Below are positions 23,065 to 35,961 of a stretch of 64,000 nucleotides of DNA, piece by piece; positions within the stretch are counted from its first letter, which is position 1, and each line of letters starts with the position of its first letter. The translations under genes were made by a program, and so were the position numbers. The notes beneath the pieces are model-generated. The model was not told where the DNA came from. It ran no database searches and saw only the letters and a list, made by a program, of their open reading frames with translations. The stretch spans positions 164,850 through 228,849 of the IMG/VR virus record IMGVR_UViG_3300034117_001294, one strand, 5' to 3'.

Positions 23065-25734
23065 ATGAGCTACGTCGATTCAATGTGGGATCGCGACAAG
23101 GACGTTATTCGCGTCGTTGAGCGTGATCCCAAAAAAGGCAGAATCTTTCAAGATTATCCTGCCAAATATGTATTATACTACCCAGACTCTAAAGGAAAAT
23201 ATCGTTCAATTTACGGTGATCCTCTTAGCAAAGTTTCTGTCAAAAATTACAAAGAGTTCCAAAAAGAAACCCGAATTCATTCAGGAAAGAAACTCTTTGA
23301 AAATGATATTAATCCTGTATTCCGATGCCTAGAAGAAAACTATTTAGGCAAAGATGCTCCTAAGCTCAATGTAGCATTTTGGGACATTGAAGTAGACTTT
23401 GATCCAGAACGTGGTTACAGTACTCCTGAAGATGCGTTCATGCCAATTACTGCGATTTCTGTCCACCTACAATGGTTAGATACATTAGTATGTCTTGCAG
23501 TCCCCCCAAAGACACTGACAATGGAGCAAGCAGTAGAGCAGGTAAAAGACTTTCCTAACACAATGCTGTTTGAAACAGAATACGAAATGTTGGAAACATT
23601 CCTGGGCTTGATTCAAGATGCAGATATTTTAAGCGGATGGAACAGTGAAGGATACGATATGCCTTATACTGTCAACCGCATCATTAAAGTTCTTAGCAAA
23701 GAAGATACCCGTAGGTTATGTCTATGGGACCAGTTCCCCAAGAAACGGGAGTACGAGAAGTATGGAAAAAAGGCTATTACTTATGATCTTGTTGGTCGTG
23801 TTCATTTGGACAGTCTCGAGTTGTACCGCAAGTACACCTATGAAGAGCGACATACATACCGATTGGATGCAATTGGAGAGATGGAGGTAGGTGAAACTAA
23901 GACGCAGTACGAAGGTACCCTAGATCAATTGTACAACAATGACTTCCGCAAGTTTATTGAATACAACAGGCAAGATACTGCATTGCTGAATAAACTAGAT
24001 AATAAATTAAAATTTATTGACCTAGCAAATACACTAGCACATGAATGTACTGTGTTGTTACAGACCACAATGGGTGCTGTGGCTGTAACTGAGCAGGCCA
24101 TTGTAAATGAAGCTCATCATCGAGGACTAATTGTTCCGGGTCGTCCTAAACGTGATGATGATTTAGAAACACAAGCCGCTGGTGCGTATGTTGCATATCC
24201 TAAGAAAGGATTGCATGACTGGATTGGATCAATGGACATTAACTCATTGTATCCGTCAGCTATTCGTGCATTAAACATGGGACCAGAAACTATTGTTGGG
24301 CAGTTACGTCAATCTTATACCAAAGCTGAAATTGAAGGTAAGATAGCAAAGGGTTCTAGCTTTGCAGCCTCTTGGGAAGGCAAGTTCGGCAGTAACGAAT
24401 ACGAACTTGTCATGGCAAAAGATCGTGTAACTGATATCACAGTTGATTGGGAAGATGGCAGAGTTGATGTGCTAAGTGGGGCTCAAATTTATGAACTGAT
24501 TTTTGAAAGTAATCAGCCGTGGGTTATCTCAGCAAACGGTACTATCTTTACCTATGAGAAAGAAGGGATCATTCCTGGATTGTTGAAACGTTGGTATGCC
24601 GAACGTAAAGAAATGCAGGCAAAATTAAAAGAATGTATTGCATCGGGGAATAAAGTTGAAGAAGAATATTGGGATAAAAGACAGCTGGTTAAAAAGATTA
24701 ACCTTAATAGCTTATACGGTGCTATTCTTAACGCTGGTTGTAGGTTCTTTGATAATCGTATTGGGCAATCCACAACTCTTACTGGTAGACGGATCGCCAG
24801 GCATATGGCTTCGAAAGTAAATGAAGTTATTACTGGAGACTATAACTACACCGGCAAGAGTGTGATATACGGTGATACTGACTCTGTATATTTTAGTGCA
24901 TACACTACTTTAAAAAATGATATCAATAAAGGGGTAATTCCCTGGAACAAAGAAGTTGTCGTTCAACTATACGATACTATCTCTGAAGAAGTAAATGGAA
25001 CATTTCCACAATTTATGTTGGACGATTTTCATTGCCCAAAAACTCGAGGAGATGTTATTAAGGCCGGTCGAGAATTTGTTGCTATCAAAGGCATCTTTAT
25101 GACCAAGAAGCGATACGCTATCTTGTACTTTGACAAGGAAGGTAAGAGGCAAGATATAGATGGCAAGCCAGGTAAAATCAAAGCCATGGGCTTAGATTTG
25201 AAACGTAGTGATACTCCTGAATTTATGCAAAACTTTTTAAGCGAGATTTTAACCAAAGTTCTTAACAATGCTCAAGAAGAAGAAATTCTAGAACGTATCG
25301 GTGAGTTCCGAAGTGAATTCAAACAGAGGCCTGGGTGGGAGAAGGGTAGTCCTAAACGTGCAAATAACATTGCAGAGTATCAGGCCAAAGAAGTCAAAGC
25401 GGGTAGAACCAACATGCCCGGACATGTTCGTGCTAGTATTAATTGGAATACTCTTAAACGTATGAACGGTGACAAATACTCGATGGGTATTGTAGACGGC
25501 ATGAAAGTTATTGTGTGCAAGATGAAAGACAATCCATTAGGATACACTTCAATTGCATATCCAGTTGACGAAATGCGTTTACCGAAATGGTTCCAAGAAC
25601 TTCCGTTTGATCATGGGGAGATGGAGGCAACCATTATTAACAATAAGCTAGAAAACCTTATTGGAGTACTAGAGTGGGATTTAGAATCCACTACACAAAA
25701 TAATACATTCGGCAGTTTATTCAGCTTTGAATAA
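23065..25734 (+). CDS. B-family DNA polymerase (T4 gp43-like)
   Basis: ExoI DIE, ExoII GWNSEGYD, ExoIII YNRQD, motif A DINSLYPS, motif B KINLNSLYG, motif C YGDTDS, KKRY. Confidence 0.96.
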   Translation: MSYVDSMWDRDKDVIRVVERDPKKGRIFQDYPAKYVLYYPDSKGKYRSIYGDPLSKVSVKNYKEFQKETRIHSGKKLFENDINPVFRCLEENYLGKDAPKLNVAFWDIEVDFDPERGYSTPEDAFMPITAISVHLQWLDTLVCLAVPPKTLTMEQAVEQVKDFPNTMLFETEYEMLETFLGLIQDADILSGWNSEGYDMPYTVNRIIKVLSKEDTRRLCLWDQFPKKREYEKYGKKAITYDLVGRVHLDSLELYRKYTYEERHTYRLDAIGEMEVGETKTQYEGTLDQLYNNDFRKFIEYNRQDTALLNKLDNKLKFIDLANTLAHECTVLLQTTMGAVAVTEQAIVNEAHHRGLIVPGRPKRDDDLETQAAGAYVAYPKKGLHDWIGSMDINSLYPSAIRALNMGPETIVGQLRQSYTKAEIEGKIAKGSSFAASWEGKFGSNEYELVMAKDRVTDITVDWEDGRVDVLSGAQIYELIFESNQPWVISANGTIFTYEKEGIIPGLLKRWYAERKEMQAKLKECIASGNKVEEEYWDKRQLVKKINLNSLYGAILNAGCRFFDNRIGQSTTLTGRRIARHMASKVNEVITGDYNYTGKSVIYGDTDSVYFSAYTTLKNDINKGVIPWNKEVVVQLYDTISEEVNGTFPQFMLDDFHCPKTRGDVIKAGREFVAIKGIFMTKKRYAILYFDKEGKRQDIDGKPGKIKAMGLDLKRSDTPEFMQNFLSEILTKVLNNAQEEEILERIGEFRSEFKQRPGWEKGSPKRANNIAEYQAKEVKAGRTNMPGHVRASINWNTLKRMNGDKYSMGIVDGMKVIVCKMKDNPLGYTSIAYPVDEMRLPKWFQELPFDHGEMEATIINNKLENLIGVLEWDLESTTQNNTFGSLFSFE

Positions 25735-25787: not shown

Positions 25788-26522
25788 ATGAAAGACATTC
25801 TTCAAGACATCGTAGGTCACACACATAACCTTGGTTTCCTAAACATTGTGAAAATTACTGGAGACGATAAAAAGACCTCCGTTGACAGTATGGCAGATGA
25901 CCGTTCAGTTATCATGTACGCCGAAACTGCTAACCCATATCCAGATATGATTGGCGTATTTGGTATGCCACAAATGAACAAACTCAAGTATTTGCTAGAT
26001 TGCCCTGAGTATAAAGAAGATGCTAAGATTGAAGTTACTACCGCAGACCGTAATGGCGATACTATCCCAACTGGTTTGCACTTTGAAAATAAGACCAAGG
26101 ATTTTAAGAACGATTACCGTTTTATGAACACTGACATCATTAACGAAAAGTTAAAGACTGTTAAGTTTCGCGGAGTTAGATGGGATGTCGAGATCGAGCC
26201 CAGCGTTCAAAGTGTACAACGTTTTCAGTTCCAGGCGGCTGCAAACAACGAGCACACTACATTCCTTGCAAAGACTGATGGTGGTAATTTAAAGTTTACA
26301 TTTGGTGACCAAAGTACACACGGTGGTGAATTTATTTTTGCAACAGGTGTTACTGGTAGCCTAAATAAAGGATGGACATGGCCTGTTCAAAGTGTATTGA
26401 GCATTCTTAAAATTGCCGATGCAAACAATGCCAAAGTTAGTTTTAGCAATGAAGGTGCTATGCAGATTACATTAGATAGCGGTCTAGCTACTTACAAATA
26501 TATTATTCCAGCACAGGCATGA
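25788..26522 (+). CDS. putative DNA sliding clamp (gp45/PCNA-like)
   Basis: 244 aa, directly after polymerase; PCNA-like C-terminus (GAMQITLDSGLATYKYIIPA); clamp loader present in window. Confidence 0.65.
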   Translation: MKDILQDIVGHTHNLGFLNIVKITGDDKKTSVDSMADDRSVIMYAETANPYPDMIGVFGMPQMNKLKYLLDCPEYKEDAKIEVTTADRNGDTIPTGLHFENKTKDFKNDYRFMNTDIINEKLKTVKFRGVRWDVEIEPSVQSVQRFQFQAAANNEHTTFLAKTDGGNLKFTFGDQSTHGGEFIFATGVTGSLNKGWTWPVQSVLSILKIADANNAKVSFSNEGAMQITLDSGLATYKYIIPAQA

Positions 26523-26890
26523 TAAAAGGGTTAACCCACAGTGGACTATACCTCCAGGTAACTGGAGGCAGTCCAATGAATCCTTACATTCCTTCCGGAA
26601 ACCAATCAGCAGGTATGATGAGATATAATACCTCTAATCATAATATAGAAGTGTATGACGGTTCATCGTGGCAAGAGTTAGCCAGCAGCTATGCTAGTGT
26701 ATCAATGACCAGTGAAGCAGTAGCATTGCTTGACTGGGCTCGAAAGAAGCGTGACGAAGAATTGCAACTTGAAGCATTGGCCCGAGAACATCCTGCTATT
26801 AATATTGCCTTGGGCAATTTAAAGAAGGCCAAGATACAATTAGATGCTACAATAATATTAAGTAAAGAACATGACGAAACAACAAGTTAA
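26519..26890 (+). CDS. hypothetical protein
   Basis: GMMRYNTSNHNIEVYDGSSW motif plus helical C-terminus. Confidence 0.75.
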   Translation: MIKGLTHSGLYLQVTGGSPMNPYIPSGNQSAGMMRYNTSNHNIEVYDGSSWQELASSYASVSMTSEAVALLDWARKKRDEELQLEALAREHPAINIALGNLKKAKIQLDATIILSKEHDETTS

Positions 26891-28508
26891 CCTAACACCA
26901 TTACAGAAAGACTATGCTGTCTATTTGCCAGCTATTAGTAGTTTCTATAGTACCTATGTTGCCAAACAACGACTAGAAGAATTCGTGCCTAAAGCTCGAG
27001 TTCCGGCAGGATTTGATCGTGGTATTGAAGGTATGAATTTTTTAAATCCTGAACAAGGATATTTCACATACAAGTACGGTCTATACTCTGCGGGTCACGC
27101 ACAGTTGGACTTGAATAAGAGTATAACGCAGGAGTCAATGATCCAACAACGTGATCGCGGGAATACAATGATTCTGGGAGACTCCGGCGGATACCAAATT
27201 GGTAAGGGCGTTCTAAAGTTTGACTGGTTAGACTTTGAAGGTAAAAGTGCTACTAAGACACGCCAAAGTATTTTAGAATGGCTCGAGCTCACAGCCGACT
27301 GGTCAATGATGTTAGACGTTCCTACATGGGCTTGCGATCACATCCATAGTCCAAAGACAGGCTTAAAAACATTCGATGACTGTTTAGACAAGACTCGCTA
27401 CAACAACGATTACTTCCTAATGAATCGATTAGGCCAAACTAAATGGCTCAATGTTTTACAAGGTTCAGATTGGGACACTGCTGAAAAGTGGTATGCAGGT
27501 GTAAAAGAATTCAGCGATCCTAAAGGTAAGTATGCAGGTCGCGAAGCAGAAGGTTGGGCCTTCGGTGGTGCCAATATGTGCAAGATGGATATTACACTCA
27601 AGCGTCTAATGACCTTGCGTGAAGATGGTTTGCTGAAGGGCAAAAACTGGATCCACTTCTTGGGTACAGCACAACTCGACTGGAGTTGTTACTTAACTTT
27701 GATTCAACGACAAATTAGGAAACATATTAATGAAGAGCTTACCATATCTTTTGACTGTGCCTCACCGTTCATCGCAACAGCACACGGACTTGTCTACACA
27801 AACGCAGTCCACACGCCAAAAAGGTGGAGTGTTATTATGGACAAAGCCCCAGATAACAAAGCACTTTCAGGATCAGATATCCCGTTCCCATTCGAATCGT
27901 CAATCGGTCGCAGACTAACAATGAAGGATATTGCCTACTATGATCTAGGCGAGAGAAAGACTGACGCAGAATTAAATGGTGCTAAGTTTGATCACTTAAA
28001 TCCTGCTCACTATAACACTGTGCCGAGACTTAATAAACTAGGTAAGATTCCAAACAAAACATCGTGGGATAGTTTTGCCTATGCATTGATGATGGGTCAT
28101 AATGTTGAGTGTCATATTGTTGCGGTACAACGTGCTCAACAGTTAATGGATATTGAGATTGCCAAGACTTCCGGCAAGCTACATTGGACACATTGGAAAA
28201 AAGTTAAGGGCTCTGATATGAGCGACGAACACAGTGACTGGGTTCCTAGAAATGTGTTATACTTTAATACCTTTGTAGAGGATCTATTCAATACTAAGGA
28301 TAAAGCAGAAGCATTTGCAATGATCGAACAAGCTATGCCTTTCTTAAAGAGTTTAGAAGGTTCTCGCTTGCAAGGCGGTCCTGCTCAAAACAAGTTTAAC
28401 AACTTATTCGAAATTGAAGAAGTTACTACTTCGTCGGAAGTAGATTTAGAAAATCCAGACGATGACGACCTACGTTCTTTAGAAGAAGGAATTATTAATG
28501 AATCGTGA
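26871..28508 (+). CDS. tRNA-guanine transglycosylase-fold protein, DpdA-like deazaguanine insertion enzyme
   Basis: LGDSGGYQ, MMLDVP, LNVLQG, GWAFGG, IHFLG, SFDCASP, late HN; clustered with folE and queE. Confidence 0.8.
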   Translation: MTKQQVNLTPLQKDYAVYLPAISSFYSTYVAKQRLEEFVPKARVPAGFDRGIEGMNFLNPEQGYFTYKYGLYSAGHAQLDLNKSITQESMIQQRDRGNTMILGDSGGYQIGKGVLKFDWLDFEGKSATKTRQSILEWLELTADWSMMLDVPTWACDHIHSPKTGLKTFDDCLDKTRYNNDYFLMNRLGQTKWLNVLQGSDWDTAEKWYAGVKEFSDPKGKYAGREAEGWAFGGANMCKMDITLKRLMTLREDGLLKGKNWIHFLGTAQLDWSCYLTLIQRQIRKHINEELTISFDCASPFIATAHGLVYTNAVHTPKRWSVIMDKAPDNKALSGSDIPFPFESSIGRRLTMKDIAYYDLGERKTDAELNGAKFDHLNPAHYNTVPRLNKLGKIPNKTSWDSFAYALMMGHNVECHIVAVQRAQQLMDIEIAKTSGKLHWTHWKKVKGSDMSDEHSDWVPRNVLYFNTFVEDLFNTKDKAEAFAMIEQAMPFLKSLEGSRLQGGPAQNKFNNLFEIEEVTTSSEVDLENPDDDDLRSLEEGIINES

Positions 28509-29016
28509 TTATGCAACGGGCACTAGTGATCAGGTAATTTTCTTTACAGGAAAAGAAATTGAACATACTGCGGCATATGGAATGGACACTTTGTTTGTAA
28601 CAGGTGTCCAAAATCCAGCCGAAGTATTACTGCTTGCAAAACAAGAAAAAGTAAAACATGTATACTTTGGAGCAAATCAAAGTTTTAAACCAAGAAGTAC
28701 AGAAGAACTCGAAAATTGGAAACTAATGATTATGGCTCTTTTGAAACAAGATTTTTGGTGTACTCTAGATTTTGATTGCAAATATGCAGAAGATATTTTG
28801 GAAACGGGACTGAATGAGCAAAGAAAATTCATTTCGATGATTTCTGTTAAGCTACCCTACTTGACACAGTTCAATTATAATGCTACAATAAAGCTAGACG
28901 ACAAAGATTTTGAAGCAACTAATGCAGGAGTTTGGACGCATAGGTTGCACGACTTGTTGGATAGTAATAAGTTTACCGATTGGGATCAATATAAAGAGGA
29001 CGAAATAGCAAAATGA
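28498..29016 (+). CDS. conserved hypothetical protein in deazaguanine cluster
   Basis: 172-aa ORF overlapping the TGT-like gene; HVYFGANQSF, IKLDDKDFEATNAGVW. Confidence 0.75.
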   Translation: MNRDYATGTSDQVIFFTGKEIEHTAAYGMDTLFVTGVQNPAEVLLLAKQEKVKHVYFGANQSFKPRSTEELENWKLMIMALLKQDFWCTLDFDCKYAEDILETGLNEQRKFISMISVKLPYLTQFNYNATIKLDDKDFEATNAGVWTHRLHDLLDSNKFTDWDQYKEDEIAK

Positions 29017-29219
29017 AAGAGTTTACAGTTAAAGAAAATAAAGCGTTTAGACTTCGAGTACAAAGTAAAAAATGTCTTACTCCTACAGATTTAAACCATG
29101 TACAGTTTATTCAAGAATGTTTTAACAAAGATGGTGAAGTTGACTTTACTTCAAACTATCAATTTTTCCTAACCGATTCAGAGATTAAATCTCTTGCAAA
29201 GGAATTAGTTAATGACTGA
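29013..29219 (+). CDS. hypothetical protein
   Basis: 68-aa ORF, overlaps neighbours, GAGG RBS. Confidence 0.65.
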   Translation: MKEFTVKENKAFRLRVQSKKCLTPTDLNHVQFIQECFNKDGEVDFTSNYQFFLTDSEIKSLAKELVND

Positions 29220-29595
29220 TCTTAATATGATTTGGGTTACCTTTCGCAAGGAAGGTGTTCATCTGTATCCCGCAGCGGCCACAGATCCTAAACTTAAAAC
29301 AGGCGACATGTATGATGTTAGCTTCCTTGGTACTCCGCACCGTCATATTTTCCATTTTAAAATCTATATTCAAGTATTTCACGATGATCGTGATATTGAG
29401 TTTATTCAGTTTAAGCGTTGGTTAGAGCACTGCTACACAGATGGCACACTCGAACTTAACCATAAATCCTGCGAAATGATAAGCCGTGATCTTCACGGAA
29501 CTATTTCTGCAAGATATCCAGGTCGTGAGATTTGGATTGACGTAAGTGAAGACGGCGAGAATGGCTGCTTCATTAAATTTCCTTCAACCCTTTAA
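29212..29595 (+). CDS. QueD-like T-fold protein with LxxxHRHxF motif (DpdL-like candidate CDG decarboxylase)
   Basis: EGVH, FLGTPHRHIFHF, DIEF, SCE, VSEDGENG; lacks the CxxxHGH motif of canonical QueD. Confidence 0.7.
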   Translation: MTDLNMIWVTFRKEGVHLYPAAATDPKLKTGDMYDVSFLGTPHRHIFHFKIYIQVFHDDRDIEFIQFKRWLEHCYTDGTLELNHKSCEMISRDLHGTISARYPGREIWIDVSEDGENGCFIKFPSTL

Positions 29596-29610: not shown

Positions 29611-29865
29611 ATGGCACAGCCAAATTACATTCAAAAAACCCTGTTCATGAAACCCGAAGTTGAAAAGATCTTTGATGATCTCGATAAGTGGCTTGATTAT
29701 TGCCGTTTCAACTTGTTGGATTTTAATCCAGCAGACTTGTATCGCTCTCCAGAATACAAGAATTATCAGCGTTGGAACAGCGGAGGTGAACGTCGGCCTC
29801 GCACTGAATACAAGGGTAAAAACCCTCGTCCACAATACAACAGAAATGACAGTTTTTCTCGTTGA
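29611..29865 (+). CDS. hypothetical protein
   Basis: 84-aa ORF; IFDDLDKWLDYCR..FNPADLY. Confidence 0.7.
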   Translation: MAQPNYIQKTLFMKPEVEKIFDDLDKWLDYCRFNLLDFNPADLYRSPEYKNYQRWNSGGERRPRTEYKGKNPRPQYNRNDSFSR

Positions 29866-30940
29866 TTTAGAATCAGTTGAGACTAGGTACACGGGTCAGT
29901 GGAAGACTCATGTACCTAATCTCTTACGAAAGGCAGGACACAATGTTCAAATTATCTCTGGTCCCGCAGATATTCCTAGTGCTACTACCCCTGGGGCTTT
30001 TCTTAATTTTGGCGGCACAAACATCTACAAAGCTCGGCAGGTTGAGCAGATGGGTCGGCTATTTTGCGACGGAGCCGTTCATGCAGGTGATCATTTTATA
30101 TTTACTGATGCTTGGCACCCTGGTATCATCAATCTCAAGTACATGAGTGAACTGCTGGGTATTCCAGTAACAACACACGGTCTTTGGCATGCTGGCAGTT
30201 ATGATCCACAAGACTTCCTAGGACGTCTTGTTGGCAACAAGCCTTGGGTCAGACACGCTGAAAAAAGTTTCTACCATGCTTTTGATCACAACTACTTTGC
30301 CACAGACTTTCATATTCACATGTTTTACGAAAACTTGATCCAACCAGATCCGGATCGTAAAGCAAGTATGTATAAGACTGTATTTGACGATACGTTATTC
30401 AACAACAAGGTTGTACGCACAGGCTGGCCCATGGAGTATATGGATGATATACTTACCGCATACAAGGGTATGCCAAAGCGTGACTTAATTTTATTTCCGC
30501 ATCGTATTGCACCCGAGAAGCAAGTTGAAATCTTTCGTGACTTAAAAGAACACTTGCCACAATATGAATTTGTAGTGTGTCAGGATCAACAACTGACTAA
30601 AAACGAATATCATAATTTGTTAGGCGAAGCAAAAATAGTGTTCAGTGCTAACTTGCAGGAAACTCTTGGCATTAGCTGTTACGAAGGTGCCTTAGTAGAT
30701 GCCGTTCCAATGGTACCAGATCGTCTTAGCTACTCTGAAATGTATTTCGATACATTTAAGTATCCGGAAATCTGGACTCGTAACTGGGAAAACTATCAAG
30801 GCTATCGACCGCAAATATGTCAAAAGATAATGCAGTACATGGAAAATTATAATAAATTCCTTCCTCAATTAAACAAACAAGCACAGGATCTAACCAGTTT
30901 GTTTTTCAGTGCTAACATTCTTTTAGAGAATATAAAATGA
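29846..30940 (+). CDS. GT-B fold glycosyltransferase (GT4-like)
   Basis: ILFPHRIAPEKQ, ETLGISCYEG, PMVPDRLSYSE; start reassigned to ATG 29846. Confidence 0.8.
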   Translation: MTVFLVDLESVETRYTGQWKTHVPNLLRKAGHNVQIISGPADIPSATTPGAFLNFGGTNIYKARQVEQMGRLFCDGAVHAGDHFIFTDAWHPGIINLKYMSELLGIPVTTHGLWHAGSYDPQDFLGRLVGNKPWVRHAEKSFYHAFDHNYFATDFHIHMFYENLIQPDPDRKASMYKTVFDDTLFNNKVVRTGWPMEYMDDILTAYKGMPKRDLILFPHRIAPEKQVEIFRDLKEHLPQYEFVVCQDQQLTKNEYHNLLGEAKIVFSANLQETLGISCYEGALVDAVPMVPDRLSYSEMYFDTFKYPEIWTRNWENYQGYRPQICQKIMQYMENYNKFLPQLNKQAQDLTSLFFSANILLENIK

Positions 30941-31749
30941 ATGACTCTTTTTATCCCAGAATAGGAATTGTAGGGTTAGGCTTTGTAGGTGAAGCTGTTC
31001 GATCTTCTACCGAGTTTGTACCAGATAATGTTGTATGTGTGGACTCAGATGTACGTAAAGGATACGTTGGAACTTACGCAGAGTTGATGACATGTGAGGG
31101 CATCTTTATATGTGTCCCAAGTCCAATGAATGATGACGGAAGTTGTGATACAAGTATTTTAGAAAGTGTTTTAGAAAAACTAAAAGACTTTCGAGGTGTT
31201 ATTATTTCTAAAGTAACTGCACCGCCAAATGTATATCAACGTCTTAATAAAGTCTATCCTAATCTAGTACACAGTCCAGAATTTTTGACCGCGGCTAATG
31301 CCAGTAGAGATTATGCCAACGCAAAGTGGTGTATTATTGGCGGTGATGTTAGAGCATATCGAAACGAAGCAGAACGCATTATCAAAATGACGCAGCCGAA
31401 TTTAGAATCAGTTAAGTTCTGTAATATTGGAGATGCTGCCTTGGCCAAATATGCTATTAACAACTTTCTTGCTACTAAGGTAGTGTTCATGAATGAACTT
31501 TATCAACTAGCTGAAAAAGCTGGATTAAATTATGACGTGATTGTTAATTTAATTAAACAAGATGTACGTATTGGTGAAAGTCATATGCGTGTTCCGGGTA
31601 TAGATGGTTCTTTAGGATTTGGTGGATACTGCTTTCCAAAAGATACAGAAGCACTAATAAACTATGCCAAAGAACATAATGTTAACCTAAATGTAATTTC
31701 ATCAGCCGTGCAGAAAAATTTGCTACTACGGTTGACTGAACCTAAATAA
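30937..31749 (+). CDS. UDP-glucose/GDP-mannose dehydrogenase family (short form lacking C-terminal domain)
   Basis: GIVGLGFVG, FICVPSP, HSPEFL, KYAINNFLATKV.F.NE, GFGGYCFPKD. Confidence 0.88.
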   Translation: MNDSFYPRIGIVGLGFVGEAVRSSTEFVPDNVVCVDSDVRKGYVGTYAELMTCEGIFICVPSPMNDDGSCDTSILESVLEKLKDFRGVIISKVTAPPNVYQRLNKVYPNLVHSPEFLTAANASRDYANAKWCIIGGDVRAYRNEAERIIKMTQPNLESVKFCNIGDAALAKYAINNFLATKVVFMNELYQLAEKAGLNYDVIVNLIKQDVRIGESHMRVPGIDGSLGFGGYCFPKDTEALINYAKEHNVNLNVISSAVQKNLLLRLTEPK

Positions 31750-31804: not shown

Positions 31805-32506
31805 ATGACAGATACAAGTAAAAACTTATCGCAAGCCATACGCGATAAAATGAAAGCAAACGGAAAAAGATTCTGGGCTGGTGATAATATTTCAGAATAT
31901 ATCAAACCCATGGATAAAATAGACCTTATCAACGAAGCGACAACCGCATTTGAAAAAGTGCTAGATACATTGCTTATTGATCGCGAAACTGATCCAAATA
32001 GTAAAGGCACAGCACGTCGACTGGCCAAAATGTACTACAACGAAATAATGGCAGGAAGATATGATGATGCACCAGACGCAACAGCGTTTCCAAATGATTC
32101 GGAGGACCGTTACGAAGGTATGTTGGTTGTTCGTAGCGAGCTTCGCAGTATGTGTAGCCATCATCACCAACCCGTTAGTGGCGTTGCTTATATTGGTATT
32201 ATTGCGGCTGAGAAACTCATCGGACTTAGCAAGTATACAAGGATCGCTCAGTGGTGTGCCCGTCGAGGTACTCTCCAGGAGGAACTTGCTAATGACATTG
32301 CTAGGGAAATCCAAAAAGCCACTGACGCCAAAGACGTAGGCGTTTACATTCAAGCAGTGCATGGATGCTGTGAGAATCGAGGTATTATGGCACATAGCTC
32401 ATTGACGCAGACTACTGTGCTTAAAGGTGCGTTTAAAGACGACCAAAGTACAAAGAAAGAATTCTTTGACAACATCAAACTACAGCAAGACTTTGCTCCG
32501 AGGTAA
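31805..32506 (+). CDS. folE: GTP cyclohydrolase I
   Basis: SMCSHHHQP, IGLSKYTRI, LQEEL, HGCCENRG. Confidence 0.95.
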   Translation: MTDTSKNLSQAIRDKMKANGKRFWAGDNISEYIKPMDKIDLINEATTAFEKVLDTLLIDRETDPNSKGTARRLAKMYYNEIMAGRYDDAPDATAFPNDSEDRYEGMLVVRSELRSMCSHHHQPVSGVAYIGIIAAEKLIGLSKYTRIAQWCARRGTLQEELANDIAREIQKATDAKDVGVYIQAVHGCCENRGIMAHSSLTQTTVLKGAFKDDQSTKKEFFDNIKLQQDFAPR

Positions 32507-32722: not shown

Positions 32723-32938
32723 ATGAATTCAGTAGATATGGCTAATAACTTAATCTTCAGAGCAAGACATCTGCAAGAATTTATTGTTACTACCGACGTG
32801 CCGGAAGACTTTAGATTTAACGGAGTAATACCGTTTGATATTAATATTGCAGATAATATATTAGAGGCCAAAGTTTACGGCGTTGACTTTGACGAAGCAG
32901 TGAATCGATTAAACGACTGGCTGGAGACATGCAAATGA
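32723..32938 (+). CDS. hypothetical protein
   Basis: ATG 32723 (MNSVDMANNLI...). Confidence 0.65.
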   Translation: MNSVDMANNLIFRARHLQEFIVTTDVPEDFRFNGVIPFDINIADNILEAKVYGVDFDEAVNRLNDWLETCK

Positions 32939-33396
32939 AATGGTTCCTAAACTTTTTAGAGCAAATTGGTCGTAAACGAATTGTAATGGACAGGCAAGAA
33001 AATGAACCGTATCTCGAACGCTACTACTTATTTCTTAAAGATAGAAAGCACTTCCCCTTTAATATCTTTCTTCACAAGTTCCTTAAGTCAGACCCCGATG
33101 ATGTGCATGATCATCCATGGCCTTACGCTACTTTAATCCTTAAAGGTGGTTATTATGAATGGACTCCTAAATTTAATTCACAAGGTGCCAAGATCGGTGA
33201 GACACGGCATTGGCGTGGGCCTGGTCACTTCCGCATTTGCCCTGCTACTAGCTATCACCGTGTTGAGCTTGAAGCAGGAACAGACTGCTGGACAATGTTC
33301 ATGCCTGGACCACAAAGACGTGAATGGGGATTCCTTGTTAATAACAAATGGATCCACAACGACAAATATCTAACTGATAGAGCAAATAATGGATAG
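32929..33396 (+). CDS. cupin-fold protein
   Basis: LHKF..SDPDDVHDHPW...GGYYE...YHRVEL...REWGF. Confidence 0.7.
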   Translation: MQMKWFLNFLEQIGRKRIVMDRQENEPYLERYYLFLKDRKHFPFNIFLHKFLKSDPDDVHDHPWPYATLILKGGYYEWTPKFNSQGAKIGETRHWRGPGHFRICPATSYHRVELEAGTDCWTMFMPGPQRREWGFLVNNKWIHNDKYLTDRANNG

Positions 33397-33667
33397 TAAA
33401 ACAAAAGAAGTAATGGACATTCTACAAGAAGAATGTGCAGAAGTAATTCAAGCGGTGAGCAAGATTAGTCGATTTGGCATTGACAACTTCAAGCCAGGCA
33501 AGCCCAAAACTAATCGAGAACACCTTGAAGAAGAATTGGGCGACATGCTGGCAATGATTGACATCATGCTGGAAAAGAATGTAATATCATTAGAACACTT
33601 AGAAGTTGCAAAAGCTGCTAAGATCGAAAAATTAAAACAATGGTCAAACATATATGAGCAAAATTAA
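33389..33667 (+). CDS. MazG-like nucleotide pyrophosphohydrolase
   Basis: LQEECAEVIQAVSK...LEEELGDML (ExxE...ExxD). Confidence 0.8.
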   Translation: MDSKTKEVMDILQEECAEVIQAVSKISRFGIDNFKPGKPKTNREHLEEELGDMLAMIDIMLEKNVISLEHLEVAKAAKIEKLKQWSNIYEQN

Positions 33668-34511
33668 AATAAGCGAATTATTCTATTCGATTCAAGGAGA
33701 AGGACGCTACATGGGCGTGCCTTCTGTATTTCTACGTACATACGGATGTAACTTTACCTGTCAAGGATTTGGCATGCCCCGAGGCGAGGTAAGTCACGAA
33801 GCAACAGACATTGCGGCACAGCATACAATGATAACTCCATTTACAGAGTACAAGTCTTTGCCTCTTGTTAGTACAGGTTGTGACAGTTATGCAAGTTGGC
33901 ATCCTGCATTTAAAGATCTAAGTCCAATGATTGAGGCTGACGGAATTGTAGAACGCATTATAGAAATGCTTCCTAACAACGAATGGGGGGATGCTCATCT
34001 TGTTATTACGGGTGGTGAGCCGTTGTTGGGTTGGCAGAAGGCTTACCCAGACTTACTGGATCATCCCAAGATGGTAGGGTTAAAAGAAATCACATTTGAA
34101 ACAAATGGTACAATGCGACTGACTAGTGCATTTAAAAATTATCTACGTATTTGGACTACAGAGAATCTAGAACGAGAAATTACTTTCTCAGTCAGTGCAA
34201 AACTACCTTGTAGTGGAGAACCGTGGGATGATGCTATCAAGCCAGAAGTTGTTTGCGATTACGAAAATTACGGCACAGCATATTTGAAGTTTGTTATAGC
34301 TACAGAGCAAGACTTTGCAGATGCAATGAAGGCAACTAAAGAATTCCGTGATGCAGGATTTAAAGGACACGTTTATCTAATGCCAGTGGGTGGTGTAGAA
34401 AGTGTCTATGCACTAAACAACAAGGCAGTGGCCATTATGGCAATGAACGCAGGCTTACGTTATAGCGACCGTTTACAAGTGCCGTTATTTAAAAATGAGT
34501 GGGGAACTTAA
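33654..34511 (+). CDS. queE: 7-carboxy-7-deazaguanine synthase (radical SAM)
   Basis: ISELFYSIQGEG..G.PSVFLR..GCNFTC...CDS, VITGGEP, FETNGT, SVSAKL, YLMP, RLQV. Confidence 0.9.
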   Translation: MSKIKISELFYSIQGEGRYMGVPSVFLRTYGCNFTCQGFGMPRGEVSHEATDIAAQHTMITPFTEYKSLPLVSTGCDSYASWHPAFKDLSPMIEADGIVERIIEMLPNNEWGDAHLVITGGEPLLGWQKAYPDLLDHPKMVGLKEITFETNGTMRLTSAFKNYLRIWTTENLEREITFSVSAKLPCSGEPWDDAIKPEVVCDYENYGTAYLKFVIATEQDFADAMKATKEFRDAGFKGHVYLMPVGGVESVYALNNKAVAIMAMNAGLRYSDRLQVPLFKNEWGT

Positions 34512-34957
34512 TGAACAATATCTTTAAAAAATTATTTGGTATCGATAAAATTGAAGCCGAAACTAGACGTGCAATAGAAGATGCAGAACGTGCTACAAAA
34601 ATTGCTAAAGAAGCAACTGAGCAAGCAGAACGTGCTAAAGAATTAGAACGGTTGTCAAAACTCAGTCCAAAAGAAATAGCAAACGAAAAGAAAGAGCCCT
34701 GGGTAGCTGTATTGGATACTCATGTCAATAAAGAAAACGTGCGTAACGGATTCTTTGAACTTGACTGGAATGAGTATTTCGTGTTACAATTAAGGTCCGC
34801 TGGTTATACTGGCGAAACAGATGAGGCCATTGTAGATAAATGGTTCCAAGAACTTTGCAGAGGCGTAGGTGCCGAAGAAGGTGTAGATATGGAACGTAGA
34901 GGCAGTGGCTTTGTAAATGTAAACAATTTAGGTAATGGGAAAGTTGAGGTTAGTTAA
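34511..34957 (+). CDS. conserved hypothetical phage protein
   Basis: TAATG coupling; EPWV, GFFELDWN. Confidence 0.75.
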   Translation: MNNIFKKLFGIDKIEAETRRAIEDAERATKIAKEATEQAERAKELERLSKLSPKEIANEKKEPWVAVLDTHVNKENVRNGFFELDWNEYFVLQLRSAGYTGETDEAIVDKWFQELCRGVGAEEGVDMERRGSGFVNVNNLGNGKVEVS

Positions 34958-35961
34958 TGGCACAGACATTTATTCACGTTGATACTGCAAATACATTCTT
35001 CCGAGCTCGACATGTAGTACGTGGCGGTCTTGAAGACAAAGTGGGCATGAGTCTGCATACTATTCTCAGCAGTGTACGCAAGGCGTGGCGTGATTTTAAA
35101 GGTGACCATGTTATCTTTCACCTCGAGGGGCGTAGCTGGCGTAAGGACTTTTATGCTCCTTACAAGCGTCAACGTACAGAAGCTCGTGCGGCACAGAGTC
35201 CTCGAGAAGCCGAGGAAGACCGCGTATTTTGGGAAACGTTTGATCAGTTTAAAGACTTTGTGACTAACAAGACTAACTGTACTGTGTTGCAAAATCCACG
35301 ATTAGAAGCAGATGATCTTATTGCAGGATTCATTCAAGCACATCCCGAAGATCAGCATATTATCATTTCGACAGATGGCGATTTTGCACAATTAGTTGCA
35401 CCCAATGTGAAACAATATAATGGTGTCAGTCAAGTAACTACTACTCACGAGGGGTACTTTGATGAAAAGGGCAAACGAGTTAAAGACAAGAAAACTGGAC
35501 TCATAAAACCTGAACCTGATCCAGAATGGCTATTGTTTGAGAAATGTATGCGTGGCGACACTAGCGACAATATCTTTAGTGCATATCCCGGTGTGCGTGA
35601 AAAAGGCACTAAAAATAAAGTAGGGCTTCGTGAAGCATTTGCCGACCGTAATTCTAAAGGCTATTCTTGGAACAATCTCATGTTGCAGAAGTGGGTAGAC
35701 CACGAAGGCATTGAACATAAAGTGCTAGATGATTATAATCGAAATCGTCTATTGTGTGACTTGACTGAACAGCCAGAAGAGATTCGCAATCTCATTACCG
35801 AAACTATTAACACTGCAATTACCGCAGAAAAGAATGTTCCGCAAGTTGGCATTAGACTTATGAAGTTTTGTGCAACTTATGATTTGCAAAAAATTACAGA
35901 CCAAGCACAAAGTTATGCGGAGCCTTTTAATGCAAGATATACTAGTAACGTGTCAGTTTGA
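34957..35961 (+). CDS. rnh: RNase H / 5'-3' flap exonuclease (T4 rnh-like)
   Basis: VDTAN, SWRK..YAPYK..R, LEADD, STDGDF.QL, GDTSDNI. Confidence 0.88.
   Translation: MAQTFIHVDTANTFFRARHVVRGGLEDKVGMSLHTILSSVRKAWRDFKGDHVIFHLEGRSWRKDFYAPYKRQRTEARAAQSPREAEEDRVFWETFDQFKDFVTNKTNCTVLQNPRLEADDLIAGFIQAHPEDQHIIISTDGDFAQLVAPNVKQYNGVSQVTTTHEGYFDEKGKRVKDKKTGLIKPEPDPEWLLFEKCMRGDTSDNIFSAYPGVREKGTKNKVGLREAFADRNSKGYSWNNLMLQKWVDHEGIEHKVLDDYNRNRLLCDLTEQPEEIRNLITETINTAITAEKNVPQVGIRLMKFCATYDLQKITDQAQSYAEPFNARYTSNVSV

What the first reader, a model, noticed from the sequence alone, without database searches (positions are those of the whole stretch)
29212..29595. QueD-like protein carries LxxxHRHxF rather than CxxxHGH
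Seen: FLGTPHRHIFHF and no catalytic CxxxHGH. Recalled knowledge (needs verification): phage DpdL CDG decarboxylases are QueD paralogues with this motif and yield unsubstituted 7-deazaguanine. Inference: this would explain the missing QueC, and true QueD activity would come from the host or another locus. It also creates a puzzle, because unsubstituted 7-deazaguanine has no side chain for the neighbouring glycosyltransferase, so another step (cupin 32929 or ORF 28498) may supply one.
Basis: partly seen in the sequence, partly recalled or inferred. Interest (0 to 1): 0.7.

Follow-up and report, generated by a model that had tools for sequence, protein, structure and literature searches.

The report
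DpdL-type QueD paralogue paired with glycosyltransferase
This phage gene is a member of DpdL, a recently named and still unproven enzyme family that helps replace guanine in phage DNA with 7-deazaguanine, and in its large environmental clade it always sits next to a sugar-adding enzyme, which suggests an undescribed sugar-bearing form of that DNA base.

Summary
ORF 29212-29595 (127 aa) carries L39-GTP-H43-R44-H45-I-F47 and has no CxxxHGH. The protein is a DpdL-family QueD paralogue:
- It is 55.6% identical to Acidovorax phage ACP17 DpdL and 31% to the founding Cellulophaga phiST DpdL.
- Its model (pLDDT 96) is a T-fold closest to E. coli QueD.
- The motif is conserved across a very large viral family.

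It lies in a 7-deazaguanine module: a DpdA-like transglycosylase (26871-28508), a conserved unknown (28498-29016), DpdL, a GT4-like glycosyltransferase (29846-30940), FolE, MazG and QueE.

- A true QueD is encoded by the phage itself, about 23 kb upstream of the window.
- There is no canonical QueC, but two remote QueC-like PP-loop genes lie elsewhere in the record.
- The cupin belongs to a generic phage family and is a poor candidate for the missing step.

The main new result is that in 92 of 92 related viral contigs with enough flank, DpdL is followed by a GT4-like gene (median gap 278 bp). The GT subtype and the accompanying sugar-nucleotide genes vary between contigs. The same pairing occurs in ACP17, PA5oct, Phosso and a cyanophage, but not in phiST, whose DNA carries plain dDG. 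The end product here is therefore probably a glycosylated deazaguanine. DpdL's chemistry remains unproven.

The parts
29212..29595 (+). DpdL-family T-fold protein (QueD paralogue), 127 aa. This is the finding itself.
   Evidence: ORF. phrog_17812 at 5e-33. Homologues in 28 phage records, including ACP17 and phiST DpdL. At least 1823 clusters at 50% identity with E<=1e-3. AF2 pLDDT 96 and best fold matches to QueD/PTPS.
29326..29352 (+). Signature LGTPHRHIF (L39...H43-R44-H45...F47), which replaces QueD's CxxxHGH.
   Evidence: Sequence. Conservation. The HMMER alignment places HRHiF over the HGHtF of PTPS 2dj6. Motif definition from PMC10516641.
26871..28508 (+). DpdA-like (TGT-superfamily) DNA transglycosylase candidate, 545 aa, with a DSGGYQ motif.
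   Evidence: No Pfam or NCBIfam hit. ESM Atlas feature scores 0.93 to a TGT-like cluster and 0.89 to a DpdA cluster; structure TM 0.81. Collinear weak BLASTP to ACP17 ASD50403 across the DSGG motif, E 0.008. 42.7% identical to PA5oct gp168. Its homologue in Vibrio phage 2.275.O sits beside QueF, YhhQ, QueC and FolE.
28498..29016 (+). Conserved 172-aa protein of unknown function, the usual upstream neighbour of DpdL.
   Evidence: Present in 72 of 80 related loci directly upstream of DpdL. Also in PA5oct-like phages and inside the ACP17 cluster. 27 invariant residues. AF2 pLDDT 89.6. No significant PDB fold match; the weak matches with the longest coverage are QueE, but hhalign against QueE gives probability 0.3%. 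Fused to DpdL in P0173, seen on a single 1.5 kb contig.
29013..29219 (+). Small ORF (68 aa) whose stop overlaps the DpdL start.
   Evidence: Homologue in 19 of 80 related loci.
29611..29865 (+). Small ORF (84 aa) between DpdL and the GT.
   Evidence: Homologue in 48 of 80 related loci in the same position. No family hit.
29846..30940 (+). GT-B / GT4-like glycosyltransferase, 364 aa. The start is the ATG at 29846, not the TTG at 29660.
   Evidence: Translation. ESM Atlas clusters with GT1/GT4 families, and its nearest cluster has a GT-B structure. 5 of 22 orthologues hit PF00534, best E 2.5e-4. Invariant E272 and E280, an EX7E spacing. Orthologues lie next to DpdL in Phosso, PA5oct, ACP17, X1, BUDD and BCSR5.
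30937..31749 (+). UDP-glucose/GDP-mannose dehydrogenase-like protein, 270 aa, with N-terminal and central domains only.
   Evidence: PF00984 at 6e-23 and PF03721 at 7e-14. TIGR03026 scores 135 bits, below its cutoff, and the match ends at model position 293 of 413. Present in 18 of 80 related loci.
31805..32506 (+). FolE (GTP cyclohydrolase I).
   Evidence: PF01227 at 9e-41. phrog_2197.
32929..33396 (+). Cupin of the phage 'cysteine dioxygenase' family. Probably not specific to the pathway.
   Evidence: phrog_4786 at 1.7e-40. Homologues in 107 phage records, mostly mycobacteriophages and others without deazaguanine genes.
33389..33667 (+). MazG-like nucleotide pyrophosphohydrolase.
   Evidence: PF03819 at 29.3 bits, cutoff 22.
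33654..34511 (+). Divergent QueE-like radical SAM enzyme (CDG synthase).
   Evidence: phrog_2076 at 7.7e-49. QueE NCBIfam models score 43-52 bits, all far below their cutoffs.

Best explanation
ORF 29212-29595 encodes a DpdL-family enzyme. It is a QueD-derived T-fold protein that keeps the metal-binding histidines (H17, H43, H45) and acidic residues in the positions where QueD/PTPS anchors its substrate (E88, E113). It has lost QueD's catalytic cysteine (Leu39), so it is not a CPH4 synthase.

It belongs to a phage module that replaces guanine in DNA. FolE, the phage's own QueD (outside the window) and QueE make 7-carboxy-7-deazaguanine (CDG). DpdL takes the place that QueC holds in preQ0 pathways and most likely removes or replaces the carboxyl group. 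The founding family member, in phiST, is associated with DNA carrying 2'-deoxy-7-deazaguanine. The DpdA-like transglycosylase (26871-28508) then exchanges the resulting base into DNA.

In this clade the pathway very probably continues, because the GT4-like glycosyltransferase that invariably follows DpdL would add a sugar. That sugar would be supplied or tailored by variable sugar-nucleotide genes, here the UGDH-like ORF. The final base would then be a glycosylated 7-deazaguanine derivative rather than bare dDG.

Shown here: family membership, fold, motif conservation, module composition and the DpdL-GT linkage. Inferred: the substrate (CDG), the reaction (decarboxylation), the acceptor atom and the sugar.
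For: Family membership:
- tblastn finds ACP17 DpdL at 55.6% identity (3e-37) and phiST DpdL at 31% (6e-6).
- The model is a T-fold closest to QueD.
- The motif and the acidic residues are conserved.

Module:
- FolE, MazG and QueE lie in the window.
- The phage's QueD lies at C1:141444-141950.
- The DpdA-like assignment rests.

Alternative branch to QueC:
- Vibrio phage 2.275.O has the same DNAP-clamp-DpdA...FolE...QueE backbone, but carries QueF, YhhQ and QueC in place of DpdL and the GT.

GT coupling:
- All 92 IMG/VR loci with at least 3 kb downstream of DpdL carry a GT4-like gene. The median gap is 278 bp, and 98 of 112 GT genes lie within 1.5 kb.
- There are at least two divergent GT subtypes, about 22% identical to each other.
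- Some loci carry SDR, 4,6-dehydratase/epimerase and DegT aminotransferase genes between DpdL and FolE.
- The same pairing occurs in Phosso, PA5oct, ACP17, X1, BUDD and BCSR5 and in cyanophage BUCT-ZZ01, where DpdL is flanked by two GT4 genes.

Other support:
- PA5oct DNA resists restriction enzymes whose sites contain G (PMC12191111).
- phiST has DpdL but no GT in its module, and its DNA carries plain dDG.
- One Vut_1/YhhQ-DpdL fusion protein hints that the substrate is a free deazapurine base.
Against: - No DpdL has been shown to have any activity. phiST and ACP17 dpdL co-expressed with dpdA in E. coli gave no dDG (PMC10516641).
- Unsubstituted 7-deazaguanine offers no ordinary O-glycosylation site, so the acceptor is unexplained.
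- GT4 enzymes are not known to act on DNA bases (my own knowledge, not tested here).
- The GT assignment rests on language-model features, a near relative's predicted fold, weak Pfam hits in 5 of 22 orthologues and an EX7E spacing. A profile search of the PDB found nothing.
- RHph_I1_18 and Ahp1 have DpdL with no GT within 6 kb.
- The 123 loci sampled are all at least about 60% identical in DpdL, so they are phylogenetically related and not independent observations.
- The record is only about 65% complete.
Confidence: 0.6

Rival explanations
1. Plain dDG is the end product, as in phiST. The adjacent glycosyltransferase is unrelated to the deazaguanine pathway and acts, for example, on another DNA base, a host envelope component or a virion protein.
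For: phiST DNA contains unsubstituted dDG. DG has no obvious O-acceptor. The record has two further GT1 genes at C1:~127-128.5 kb, so the phage has other glycosylation activities.
Against: Adjacency holds in 92 of 92 loci with a median gap of 278 bp, and it persists although the GT subtype changes. In ACP17 the GT lies between DpdA and DpdL inside a tight seven-gene cluster. No ThyA-like hydroxymethylase that could supply hmC or hmU is present in the 228 kb record. phiST, the one phage proven to carry bare dDG, has no GT in its module.
Confidence: 0.15
2. DpdL acts on a pterin, not on CDG. For example, it could decarboxylate or otherwise alter QueD's product CPH4. The divergent QueE would then contract a modified tetrahydropterin and give DG, or a 7-substituted base that offers a handle for the GT.
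For: The scaffold is that of a pterin-binding enzyme (QueD/PTPS). The QueE here is very divergent, scoring 43-52 bits against cutoffs of 200-300. The phiST data do not say at which step the carboxyl is lost.
Against: One Vut_1/YhhQ-DpdL fusion points to a deazapurine base as substrate, but it is a single contig. There is no direct evidence for altered QueE specificity. The authors' model of phiST DpdL favoured CDG.
Confidence: 0.13
3. DpdL is not a catalyst. It would be a base-binding accessory subunit that presents the deazaguanine base or nucleotide to the glycosyltransferase, to DpdA or to the 172-aa protein.
For: Strict adjacency to the GT. One fusion to the 172-aa protein. No activity was found in heterologous expression.
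Against: The His triad, the acidic residues and a near-invariant S-C-E motif are conserved across the 40-sequence alignment drawn from this family, which is the pattern expected of an active site. The GT-DpdL complex prediction gave no answer and is not evidence either way.
Confidence: 0.07
4. The protein is a genuine QueD (CPH4 synthase) with an unusual motif.
For: QueD-like T-fold with the metal-binding histidines retained.
Against: The catalytic Cys is replaced by Leu in at least 90% of aligned family members, and QueD is inactive without that Cys (PMC10516641). The same genomes also encode a PF01242-positive QueD. PF01242 does not match this protein.
Confidence: 0.03

Closest known systems
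DpdL (proposed 7-carboxy-7-deazaguanine decarboxylase) of Cellulophaga phage phiST (CGPG_00067) and Acidovorax phage ACP17 (ASD50405); Cui et al., NAR 2023, PMC10516641
   Same: Homologous over the full length: 31% identity to phiST DpdL and 55.6% to ACP17 DpdL. It has the same LxxxHRHxF signature and the same conserved His and Glu residues. It sits in the same kind of module, with FolE, QueD, QueE, MazG and a DpdA-type transglycosylase and no canonical QueC.
   Different: phiST pairs DpdL with a 259-aa DpdA3 and has no glycosyltransferase. Here the transglycosylase is a 545-aa protein with no detectable similarity to DpdA3, and a GT4-like gene always follows DpdL. A conserved 172-aa partner is present that shows no similarity to phiST CGPG_00066, the gene next to DpdL there. 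The function of the whole family is still only proposed.
QueD (6-carboxy-5,6,7,8-tetrahydropterin synthase, EC 4.1.2.50) / PTPS, Pfam PF01242
   Same: Same T-fold: TM 0.70-0.74 to E. coli QueD 4ntk. The three metal-binding His positions and the acidic residues are retained.
   Different: The catalytic Cys of CxxxHGH is Leu, and Gly is Arg. The protein scores below the PF01242 threshold. It co-exists with a true QueD in the same phage.
Pseudomonas jumbo phage PA5oct (Wroclawvirus) gp168-gp166 region
   Same: Collinear DNAP, clamp, DpdA-like (42.7% identical), GT (41%), DpdL (49.6%), QueE and 5'-3' exonuclease. PA5oct DNA resists restriction enzymes whose sites contain G, and a modified G is suspected (PMC12191111).
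   Different: In PA5oct the GT precedes DpdL, the 172-aa homologue lies about 27 kb away, and the motif reads HFH rather than HRH. The chemical nature of its modification has not been reported.
preQ0/preQ1-type phage deazaguanine modules (FolE-QueD-QueE-QueC plus or minus QueF, with DpdA), e.g. Vibrio phage 2.275.O
   Same: Same upstream pathway to CDG, the same genomic slot, and a homologous long DpdA-like gene.
   Different: Those modules convert CDG with QueC, with or without QueF or a GATase. This one has DpdL plus a GT instead.
T4-type DNA glucosylation (alpha- and beta-glucosyltransferases acting on 5-hydroxymethylcytosine)
   Same: Concept only: a phage GT-B-fold enzyme encoded with a base-modification pathway and presumably decorating a non-canonical base. 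This comparison is from my own knowledge.
   Different: The base is different (G-derived rather than C), and there is no hydroxymethyl acceptor and no hydroxymethylase. The GT is GT4-like rather than T4-like, and there was no Pfam or PDB sequence match to the T4 enzymes.

Membership tests
DpdL (Cui et al. 2023) | Sequence homology to the founding members phiST CGPG_00067 and ACP17 DpdL | tested here: met
   tblastn: ACP17 at 55.6% identity over 97% of the query, E 3e-37; phiST at 31.1% over 92%, E 6e-6. Confirmed locally.
DpdL (Cui et al. 2023) | Signature LxxxHRHxF in place of QueD's CxxxHGH | tested here: met
   L39-GTP-H43-R44-H45-I-F47. Each position is at least 90% conserved in the family.
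DpdL (Cui et al. 2023) | QueD/PTPS-like T-fold | tested here: met
   AF2 pLDDT 96.2. Top Foldseek matches are QueD/PTPS, probability 1.0, TM about 0.7.
DpdL (Cui et al. 2023) | Encoded with FolE, QueD, QueE and a DpdA, without QueC | tested here: inconclusive
   FolE and QueE lie in the window, QueD at C1:141444-141950, and a DpdA-like 545-aa protein is supported indirectly. There is no canonical QueC, but two remote QueC-like PP-loop ORFs match TIGR00364 only over their C-terminal roughly 50 residues, at 35 and 20 bits against a cutoff of 150. The record is about 65% complete.
DpdL (Cui et al. 2023) | CDG decarboxylase activity, with dDG in virion DNA | not testable with these tools
   Needs enzymology and LC-MS/MS. 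The activity is also unproven for the founding members.
QueD / PTPS (PF01242) | CxxxHGH with the catalytic cysteine | tested here: not met
   The Cys position is Leu39 and HGH is HRH.
QueD / PTPS (PF01242) | Match to the family HMM above its gathering score | tested here: not met
   No PF01242 hit at E<=0.1. No TIGR03367 or TIGR00039 hit.
TGT / DpdA superfamily (for neighbour 26871-28508) | TGT-like fold with the DSGG catalytic motif, plus association with deazaguanine synthesis genes | tested here: inconclusive
   PF01702 and PF23859 give no hit. A DSGGYQ motif is present. Atlas feature scores are 0.93 and 0.89, and a close cluster's model has TM 0.81 to a TGT-like cluster. Homologues lie next to deazaguanine genes in three independent phage lineages. 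No structure was predicted for this protein itself.
GT4-like retaining glycosyltransferases (for neighbour 29846-30940) | GT-B fold, Glycos_transf_1 domain, EX7E motif | tested here: inconclusive
   Atlas features and a near relative's structure agree with GT1/GT4 families. PF00534 matches 5 of 22 orthologues, all sub-threshold or weak. E272 and E280 are invariant. The PDB profile search found nothing.

The most novel reading that the evidence does not exclude
A very abundant clade of environmental large phages, together with the cultured phages PA5oct, ACP17, Phosso and a T4-like cyanophage, carries a previously undescribed glycosylated 7-deazaguanine in its DNA. In this reading DpdL, possibly working with the 172-aa partner, does not simply make inert 7-deazaguanine. 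It creates or presents the acceptor for the GT. One route would be an oxidative decarboxylation of CDG to a 7-hydroxy derivative. Another would be direct C-glycosylation of the electron-rich pyrrole carbon of DG. The sugar would differ between lineages, as the swapped GT subtypes and sugar-nucleotide genes suggest.
Probability: 0.35. Interest if true: 0.85.

Novelty: new variant of a known kind. Interest (0 to 1): 0.62.

Why it matters
- DpdL is the least understood enzyme of the phage 7-deazaguanine pathways. It has been named but never shown to work. This analysis shows that most DpdL genes sampled here are tied to a glycosyltransferase, and often to sugar-nucleotide tailoring genes. That may explain why dpdL plus dpdA alone gave no product in E. 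coli.
- If the inference holds, it points to a new class of purine DNA hypermodification, a sugar on a deazaguanine.
- The family is very large: more than 8000 clusters at 90% identity, on contigs up to 375 kb.
- It includes PA5oct, a phage that has been tested against P. aeruginosa in airway infection models and whose modified G is still chemically undefined.
- The result therefore bears on restriction evasion, on defences that sense modified DNA, and on sequencing or engineering of these phages.
- It can be tested directly by mass spectrometry on phages already in culture.

Tried and rejected
1. Single-sequence and profile HMMER searches of the PDB with DpdL gave only a marginal PTPS hit (2dj6, E 0.11). 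The fold comparison was needed to place the protein.
2. hhalign of the DpdL family against three phage QueDs gave only 46% probability, and only over the C-terminal half. I treat this as weak.
3. I first took the cupin as a possible supplier of the acceptor. It co-varies with the window-type GT (18 of 22 loci with that GT, against 2 of 19 without it). I rejected it as a core step because the family occurs in 107 unrelated phages and was not detected in the ACP17, PA5oct or Phosso DpdL regions, so the co-variation is probably phylogenetic.
4. I first counted 19 of 41 loci as lacking a GT. This was wrong: those loci carry a different GT4 subtype.
5. The 172-aa protein as a degenerate QueE. Structural matches are weak (VIA Z 5.8-6.1, Atlas TM 0.60), the profile comparison is negative, and there is no conserved Cys cluster. 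It remains unassigned.
6. No similarity was found between the 172-aa protein and phiST CGPG_00066, PA5oct gp164 or the Phosso 'glycosylase'.
7. The two QueC-like ORFs as hidden members of the pathway. They have one phage homologue each, and neither is in a DpdL phage.
8. The GT-DpdL complex prediction returned 'no answer', so it is not used as evidence.
9. Sampling of distant DpdL contexts through the look-up of encoding contigs mostly returned short contigs, plus one T4-like context with no nearby pathway genes.
10. The supplementary tables of PMC10516641 are not held, so I could not check which ACP17 gene the authors called DpdA.
11. Megablast of the region against the phage collection found nothing.
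12. Literature searches found no report of DpdL activity or of a glycosylated deazaguanine in DNA.
Full report
**1. Observation**

ORF 29212-29595 (+) is a 127-aa ATG-initiated frame whose start overlaps the stop of the upstream 68-aa ORF. Residues 38-49 read FLGTPHRHIFHF, so the pattern L39-x3-H43-R44-H45-x-F47 is present. There is no HGH and no CxxxH.

**2. What the protein is**

Curated libraries do not recognise it. Pfam and NCBIfam give no hit, and only PHROG 17812 ('unknown function') matches, at 5e-33.

It has homologues in 28 phage records:
- Sinorhizobium phage Phosso, 65% identity.
- Rhizobium phage RHph_I1_18, 57%.
- Acidovorax phage ACP17, 55.6% (E 3e-37).
- The PA5oct group of Pseudomonas jumbo phages, 49.6%.
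- Cellulophaga phage phiST and its relatives, 31% (E 6e-6).

The phiST protein (CGPG_00067) and the ACP17 protein are the ones for which Cui et al. (NAR 2023, PMC10516641) coined the name DpdL. That paper gives LxxxHRHxF versus CxxxHGH as the distinguishing signature and proposes CDG decarboxylation as the function. It also reports that dpdL co-expressed with dpdA gave no dDG in E. coli.

The family is very large. There are 1823 clusters at 50% identity.

In an alignment of 40 members, H45, S86 and E88 are invariant. H17, L39, H43, R44, F47, R60, E63, C87, E113, D114 and G118 are each at least 90% conserved.

An AlphaFold2 model (pLDDT 96.2) is a T-fold. Its best Foldseek matches are P. horikoshii PTPS and E. 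coli QueD (TM 0.70-0.74, probability 1.0), followed by other T-fold enzymes. A profile search aligns HRHiF over the HGHtF of PTPS 2dj6, and kSCEm over its PTTEN. So the protein is a QueD paralogue that keeps the metal-binding histidines and the acidic residues but lacks the catalytic cysteine.

**3. The module around it**

The window is the last 64 kb of a 228,849-bp IMG/VR record that is about 65% complete. The gene order around the finding is as follows (all on the + strand):
- Family-B DNA polymerase (23065-25734).
- A clamp-like gene (25788-26522).
- A 545-aa protein (26871-28508).
- A 172-aa protein (28498-29016).
- A 68-aa ORF (29013-29219).
- DpdL (29212-29595).
- An 84-aa ORF (29611-29865).
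- A 364-aa glycosyltransferase (29846-30940).
- A UDP-glucose-dehydrogenase-like protein lacking the C-terminal domain (30937-31749).
- FolE (31805-32506).
- A cupin (32929-33396).
- MazG (33389-33667).
- A divergent QueE (33654-34511).
- A 5'-3' exonuclease (34957-35961).

The 545-aa protein has no HMM match to TGT or DpdA. Four indirect lines nevertheless point to a DpdA-type transglycosylase:
- It contains DSGGYQ. That DSGG is the TGT catalytic motif is from my own knowledge.
- Its language-model feature scores are 0.93 to a TGT-like cluster and 0.89 to a DpdA cluster.
- It aligns collinearly, though weakly, with ACP17 ASD50403 across the DSGG motif.
- Its homologue in Vibrio phage 2.275.O lies in the same DNAP-clamp slot, directly beside QueF, a YhhQ-type transporter, QueC, a GATase, FolE and QueE.

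The comparison with 2.275.O is informative in a second way. The same backbone carries either QueC and QueF, or DpdL and a GT. This fits DpdL being an alternative branch after CDG.

**4. QueD and QueC**

A PF01242-positive QueD (52 bits, 168 aa) lies at C1:141444-141950, about 23 kb upstream of the window. It is 51% identical to ACP17 QueD and 33% to phiST QueD. All three read HCxxxHGY rather than CxxxHGH. In 12 of 80 relatives this QueD lies within 10 kb of DpdL.

No canonical QueC exists in the record. Two PP-loop ORFs are present, at C1:100634-101254 and C1:3952-4542. They match the QueC model only over their C-terminal Cys-rich roughly 50 residues, far below the cutoff. Each has a single phage homologue, and neither is in a DpdL phage. 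They are unlikely to be part of the pathway, but this cannot be excluded.

**5. The glycosyltransferase link (the main finding)**

The GT has orthologues next to DpdL in Phosso (50% identity), PA5oct gp167 (41%), ACP17 ASD50404 (34%, lying between DpdA and DpdL), Xanthomonas phages X1 and BUDD, and Burkholderia phage BCSR5.

In 80 IMG/VR loci retrieved with the DpdL alignment, the order DNAP, clamp, 545-aa, 172-aa, DpdL, (84-aa), GT, FolE, QueE, exonuclease recurs.

Loci that seemed to lack the GT instead carry a different GT4 subtype, about 22% identical to the window type. Next to it they carry an SDR, an NAD-dependent 4,6-dehydratase/epimerase and a DegT-type aminotransferase, between DpdL and FolE. 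The T4-like cyanophage BUCT-ZZ01 has the order QueE, XGPRT, QueD, FolE, GT4, DpdA, DpdL, GT4.

I scored a panel of five GT sequences on 123 loci. All 92 loci with at least 3 kb downstream of DpdL carry a GT4-like gene. The median gap is 278 bp, and 98 of 112 GT genes lie within 1.5 kb.

Two caveats apply. These loci are all at least about 60% identical in DpdL, so they are related and not independent. RHph_I1_18 and Ahp1 show no GT within 6 kb.

phiST, the one phage shown to contain bare dDG, has no GT in its module. The pairing therefore persists while the GT subtype and the sugar-tailoring genes change. That is the pattern expected if the GT decorates the product of this pathway with a lineage-specific sugar.

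I found no ThyA-like hydroxymethylase that could provide hmC or hmU as an alternative acceptor. PA5oct DNA is reported to resist restriction enzymes whose sites contain G, and its modification is chemically undefined (PMC12191111).

**6.

The cupin belongs to a PHROG found in 107 phages, mostly mycobacteriophages and others without deazaguanine genes. It was not detected in the ACP17, PA5oct or Phosso DpdL regions. Its co-variation with the window-type GT is probably phylogenetic.

The 172-aa protein is the better candidate:
- It precedes DpdL in 72 of 80 loci.
- It occurs in PA5oct-like phages and inside the ACP17 cluster.
- It has 27 invariant residues.
- It is fused to DpdL in one metagenomic protein, though only on a single 1.5 kb contig.

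Its model (pLDDT 89.6) has no significant PDB match. The weak matches with the longest coverage are QueE structures (Z about 6, TM 0.60). The profile comparison with QueE is negative, and there is no Cys cluster. Its function stays open.

Other single-contig fusions are a Vut_1/YhhQ-DpdL protein, followed on its contig by a 355-aa gene of GT size, and a DpdL-dUTPase protein. The first hints that the substrate is a free deazapurine base.

**7. How it most likely works**

Shown:
- Membership of the DpdL family, the fold and the conserved putative active-site residues.
- Membership of a FolE, QueD, QueE, DpdA-like module with no canonical QueC.
- Obligatory pairing with a GT4-like gene within the sampled clade.

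Inferred:
- DpdL takes CDG from QueE and removes or replaces the carboxyl group, by analogy with dDG in phiST.
- The DpdA-like enzyme inserts the base into DNA.
- The GT, fed by variable sugar-nucleotide enzymes, adds a sugar.

The acceptor is unknown. Bare 7-deazaguanine has no hydroxyl. Either DpdL chemistry in this clade differs (for example an oxidative decarboxylation giving a 7-hydroxy derivative), or another protein such as the 172-aa one installs a handle, or the sugar is attached to carbon or nitrogen.

The rivals considered are that the GT is unrelated to this pathway, that DpdL acts on a pterin, that DpdL is a non-catalytic adaptor, and that it is a true QueD. They are set out with their evidence in the rival-explanations section.

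**8. Comparison with what is known, and novelty**

The protein passes every sequence and structure test for DpdL, and it fails the defining tests for QueD. As a gene it is a new member of a named but unvalidated family.

The GT-coupled architecture, the long DpdA-like protein and the 172-aa partner are not described in the paper that defined DpdL (its main text was read; the supplements are not held). Nor are they described in any paper found by searches up to late 2026. I therefore rate it a new variant of a known kind. The more novel reading is a glycosylated deazaguanine in DNA, at a probability of roughly one in three.

**9. What led nowhere**

- The GT-DpdL complex prediction returned no answer and is not used.
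- The profile search of the PDB with the GT family found nothing.
- hhalign of DpdL against the phage QueDs was weak.
- Distant DpdL contexts obtained by exact-protein look-up were mostly too short to be informative.

Noticed in passing
G000:C1:141444-141950 (outside the window; L001:1447-1953), with ACP17 L006:2781-3257 and phiST L007:3481-3975: The phage QueDs that accompany DpdL share HCxxxHGY rather than the canonical CxxxHGH: the last His is Tyr and an extra His precedes the Cys. They form their own subgroup, 51% and 33% identical to the copy in this record.
   Followed up: partly
G000:C1:100634-101254 (-) and G000:C1:3952-4542 (-), outside the window: Two small PP-loop ATPases (206 and 196 aa) have an SGGxDS motif and a QueC-like C-terminal Cys cluster. 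They score far below the QueC cutoffs. Each has one phage homologue (Ralstonia RsoM2USA, Saccharomonospora PIS 136), and neither of those phages has DpdL.
   Followed up: partly
window 30937-31749: The UDP-glucose/GDP-mannose dehydrogenase-like ORF is only 270 aa and lacks the C-terminal UDP-binding domain. FolE starts 56 nt after it, so no separate ORF supplies that domain. Whether it is a functional sugar-nucleotide dehydrogenase is open.
   Followed up: no
window 29660-30940 versus 29846-30940: The mechanical ORF list extends the GT frame to a TTG at 29660 (426 aa), overlapping the 84-aa ORF. Orthologue lengths (357-367 aa) and the N-terminal alignment show that the real start is the ATG at 29846.
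   Followed up: yes
P0173 (L143:322-1290), P0182, P0257: Fusion proteins occur among the 50%-identity representatives: 172-aa protein plus DpdL; Vut_1/YhhQ-type transporter plus DpdL, followed by a 355-aa gene; and DpdL plus a dUTPase/DCD-like domain. Each was seen on one short contig, so gene-calling or assembly artefacts are not excluded.
   Followed up: partly
L141 (Vibrio phage 2.275.O, MG592671.1 322294-339808): A 349-kb Vibrio phage shares the DNAP, clamp and long DpdA-like backbone with this window. It carries QueF, a YhhQ-type transporter, QueC, a GATase and FolE where this phage has DpdL and the GT. This is a natural swap of the post-CDG branch.
   Followed up: partly
L091 (Synechococcus phage BUCT-ZZ01) 1444-1905, and 7 IMG/VR loci (e.g. 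L113, L119, L123, L125, L126): A xanthine-guanine phosphoribosyltransferase-like gene sits inside some DpdL/GT modules. It raises the possibility that the deazapurine is also converted to a nucleotide, as a PRPP-dependent enzyme does with CDG in tubercidin biosynthesis (that parallel is from my own knowledge).
   Followed up: no
G000:C1:~126.5-128.5 kb (L096, L097), outside the window: Two further Glycos_transf_1 (PF00534) genes lie side by side elsewhere in the phage record, with 63 and 30 bits.
   Followed up: no
L089 (Rhizobium phage RHph_I1_18) 6405-7229: In this phage a macro-domain ('Appr-1-p processing') protein follows DpdL directly, not a GT. QueD, FolE and a QueE-like gene are nearby.
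   Followed up: no
L039:4438-6660: Relatives with the second GT subtype carry SDR, NAD-dependent epimerase/4,6-dehydratase and DegT/DnrJ/EryC1 aminotransferase genes between DpdL and FolE. This is the toolkit for an amino-deoxy sugar nucleotide.
   Followed up: partly
window 1-64000: No tRNA or tmRNA genes were found in the 64-kb window.
   Followed up: yes
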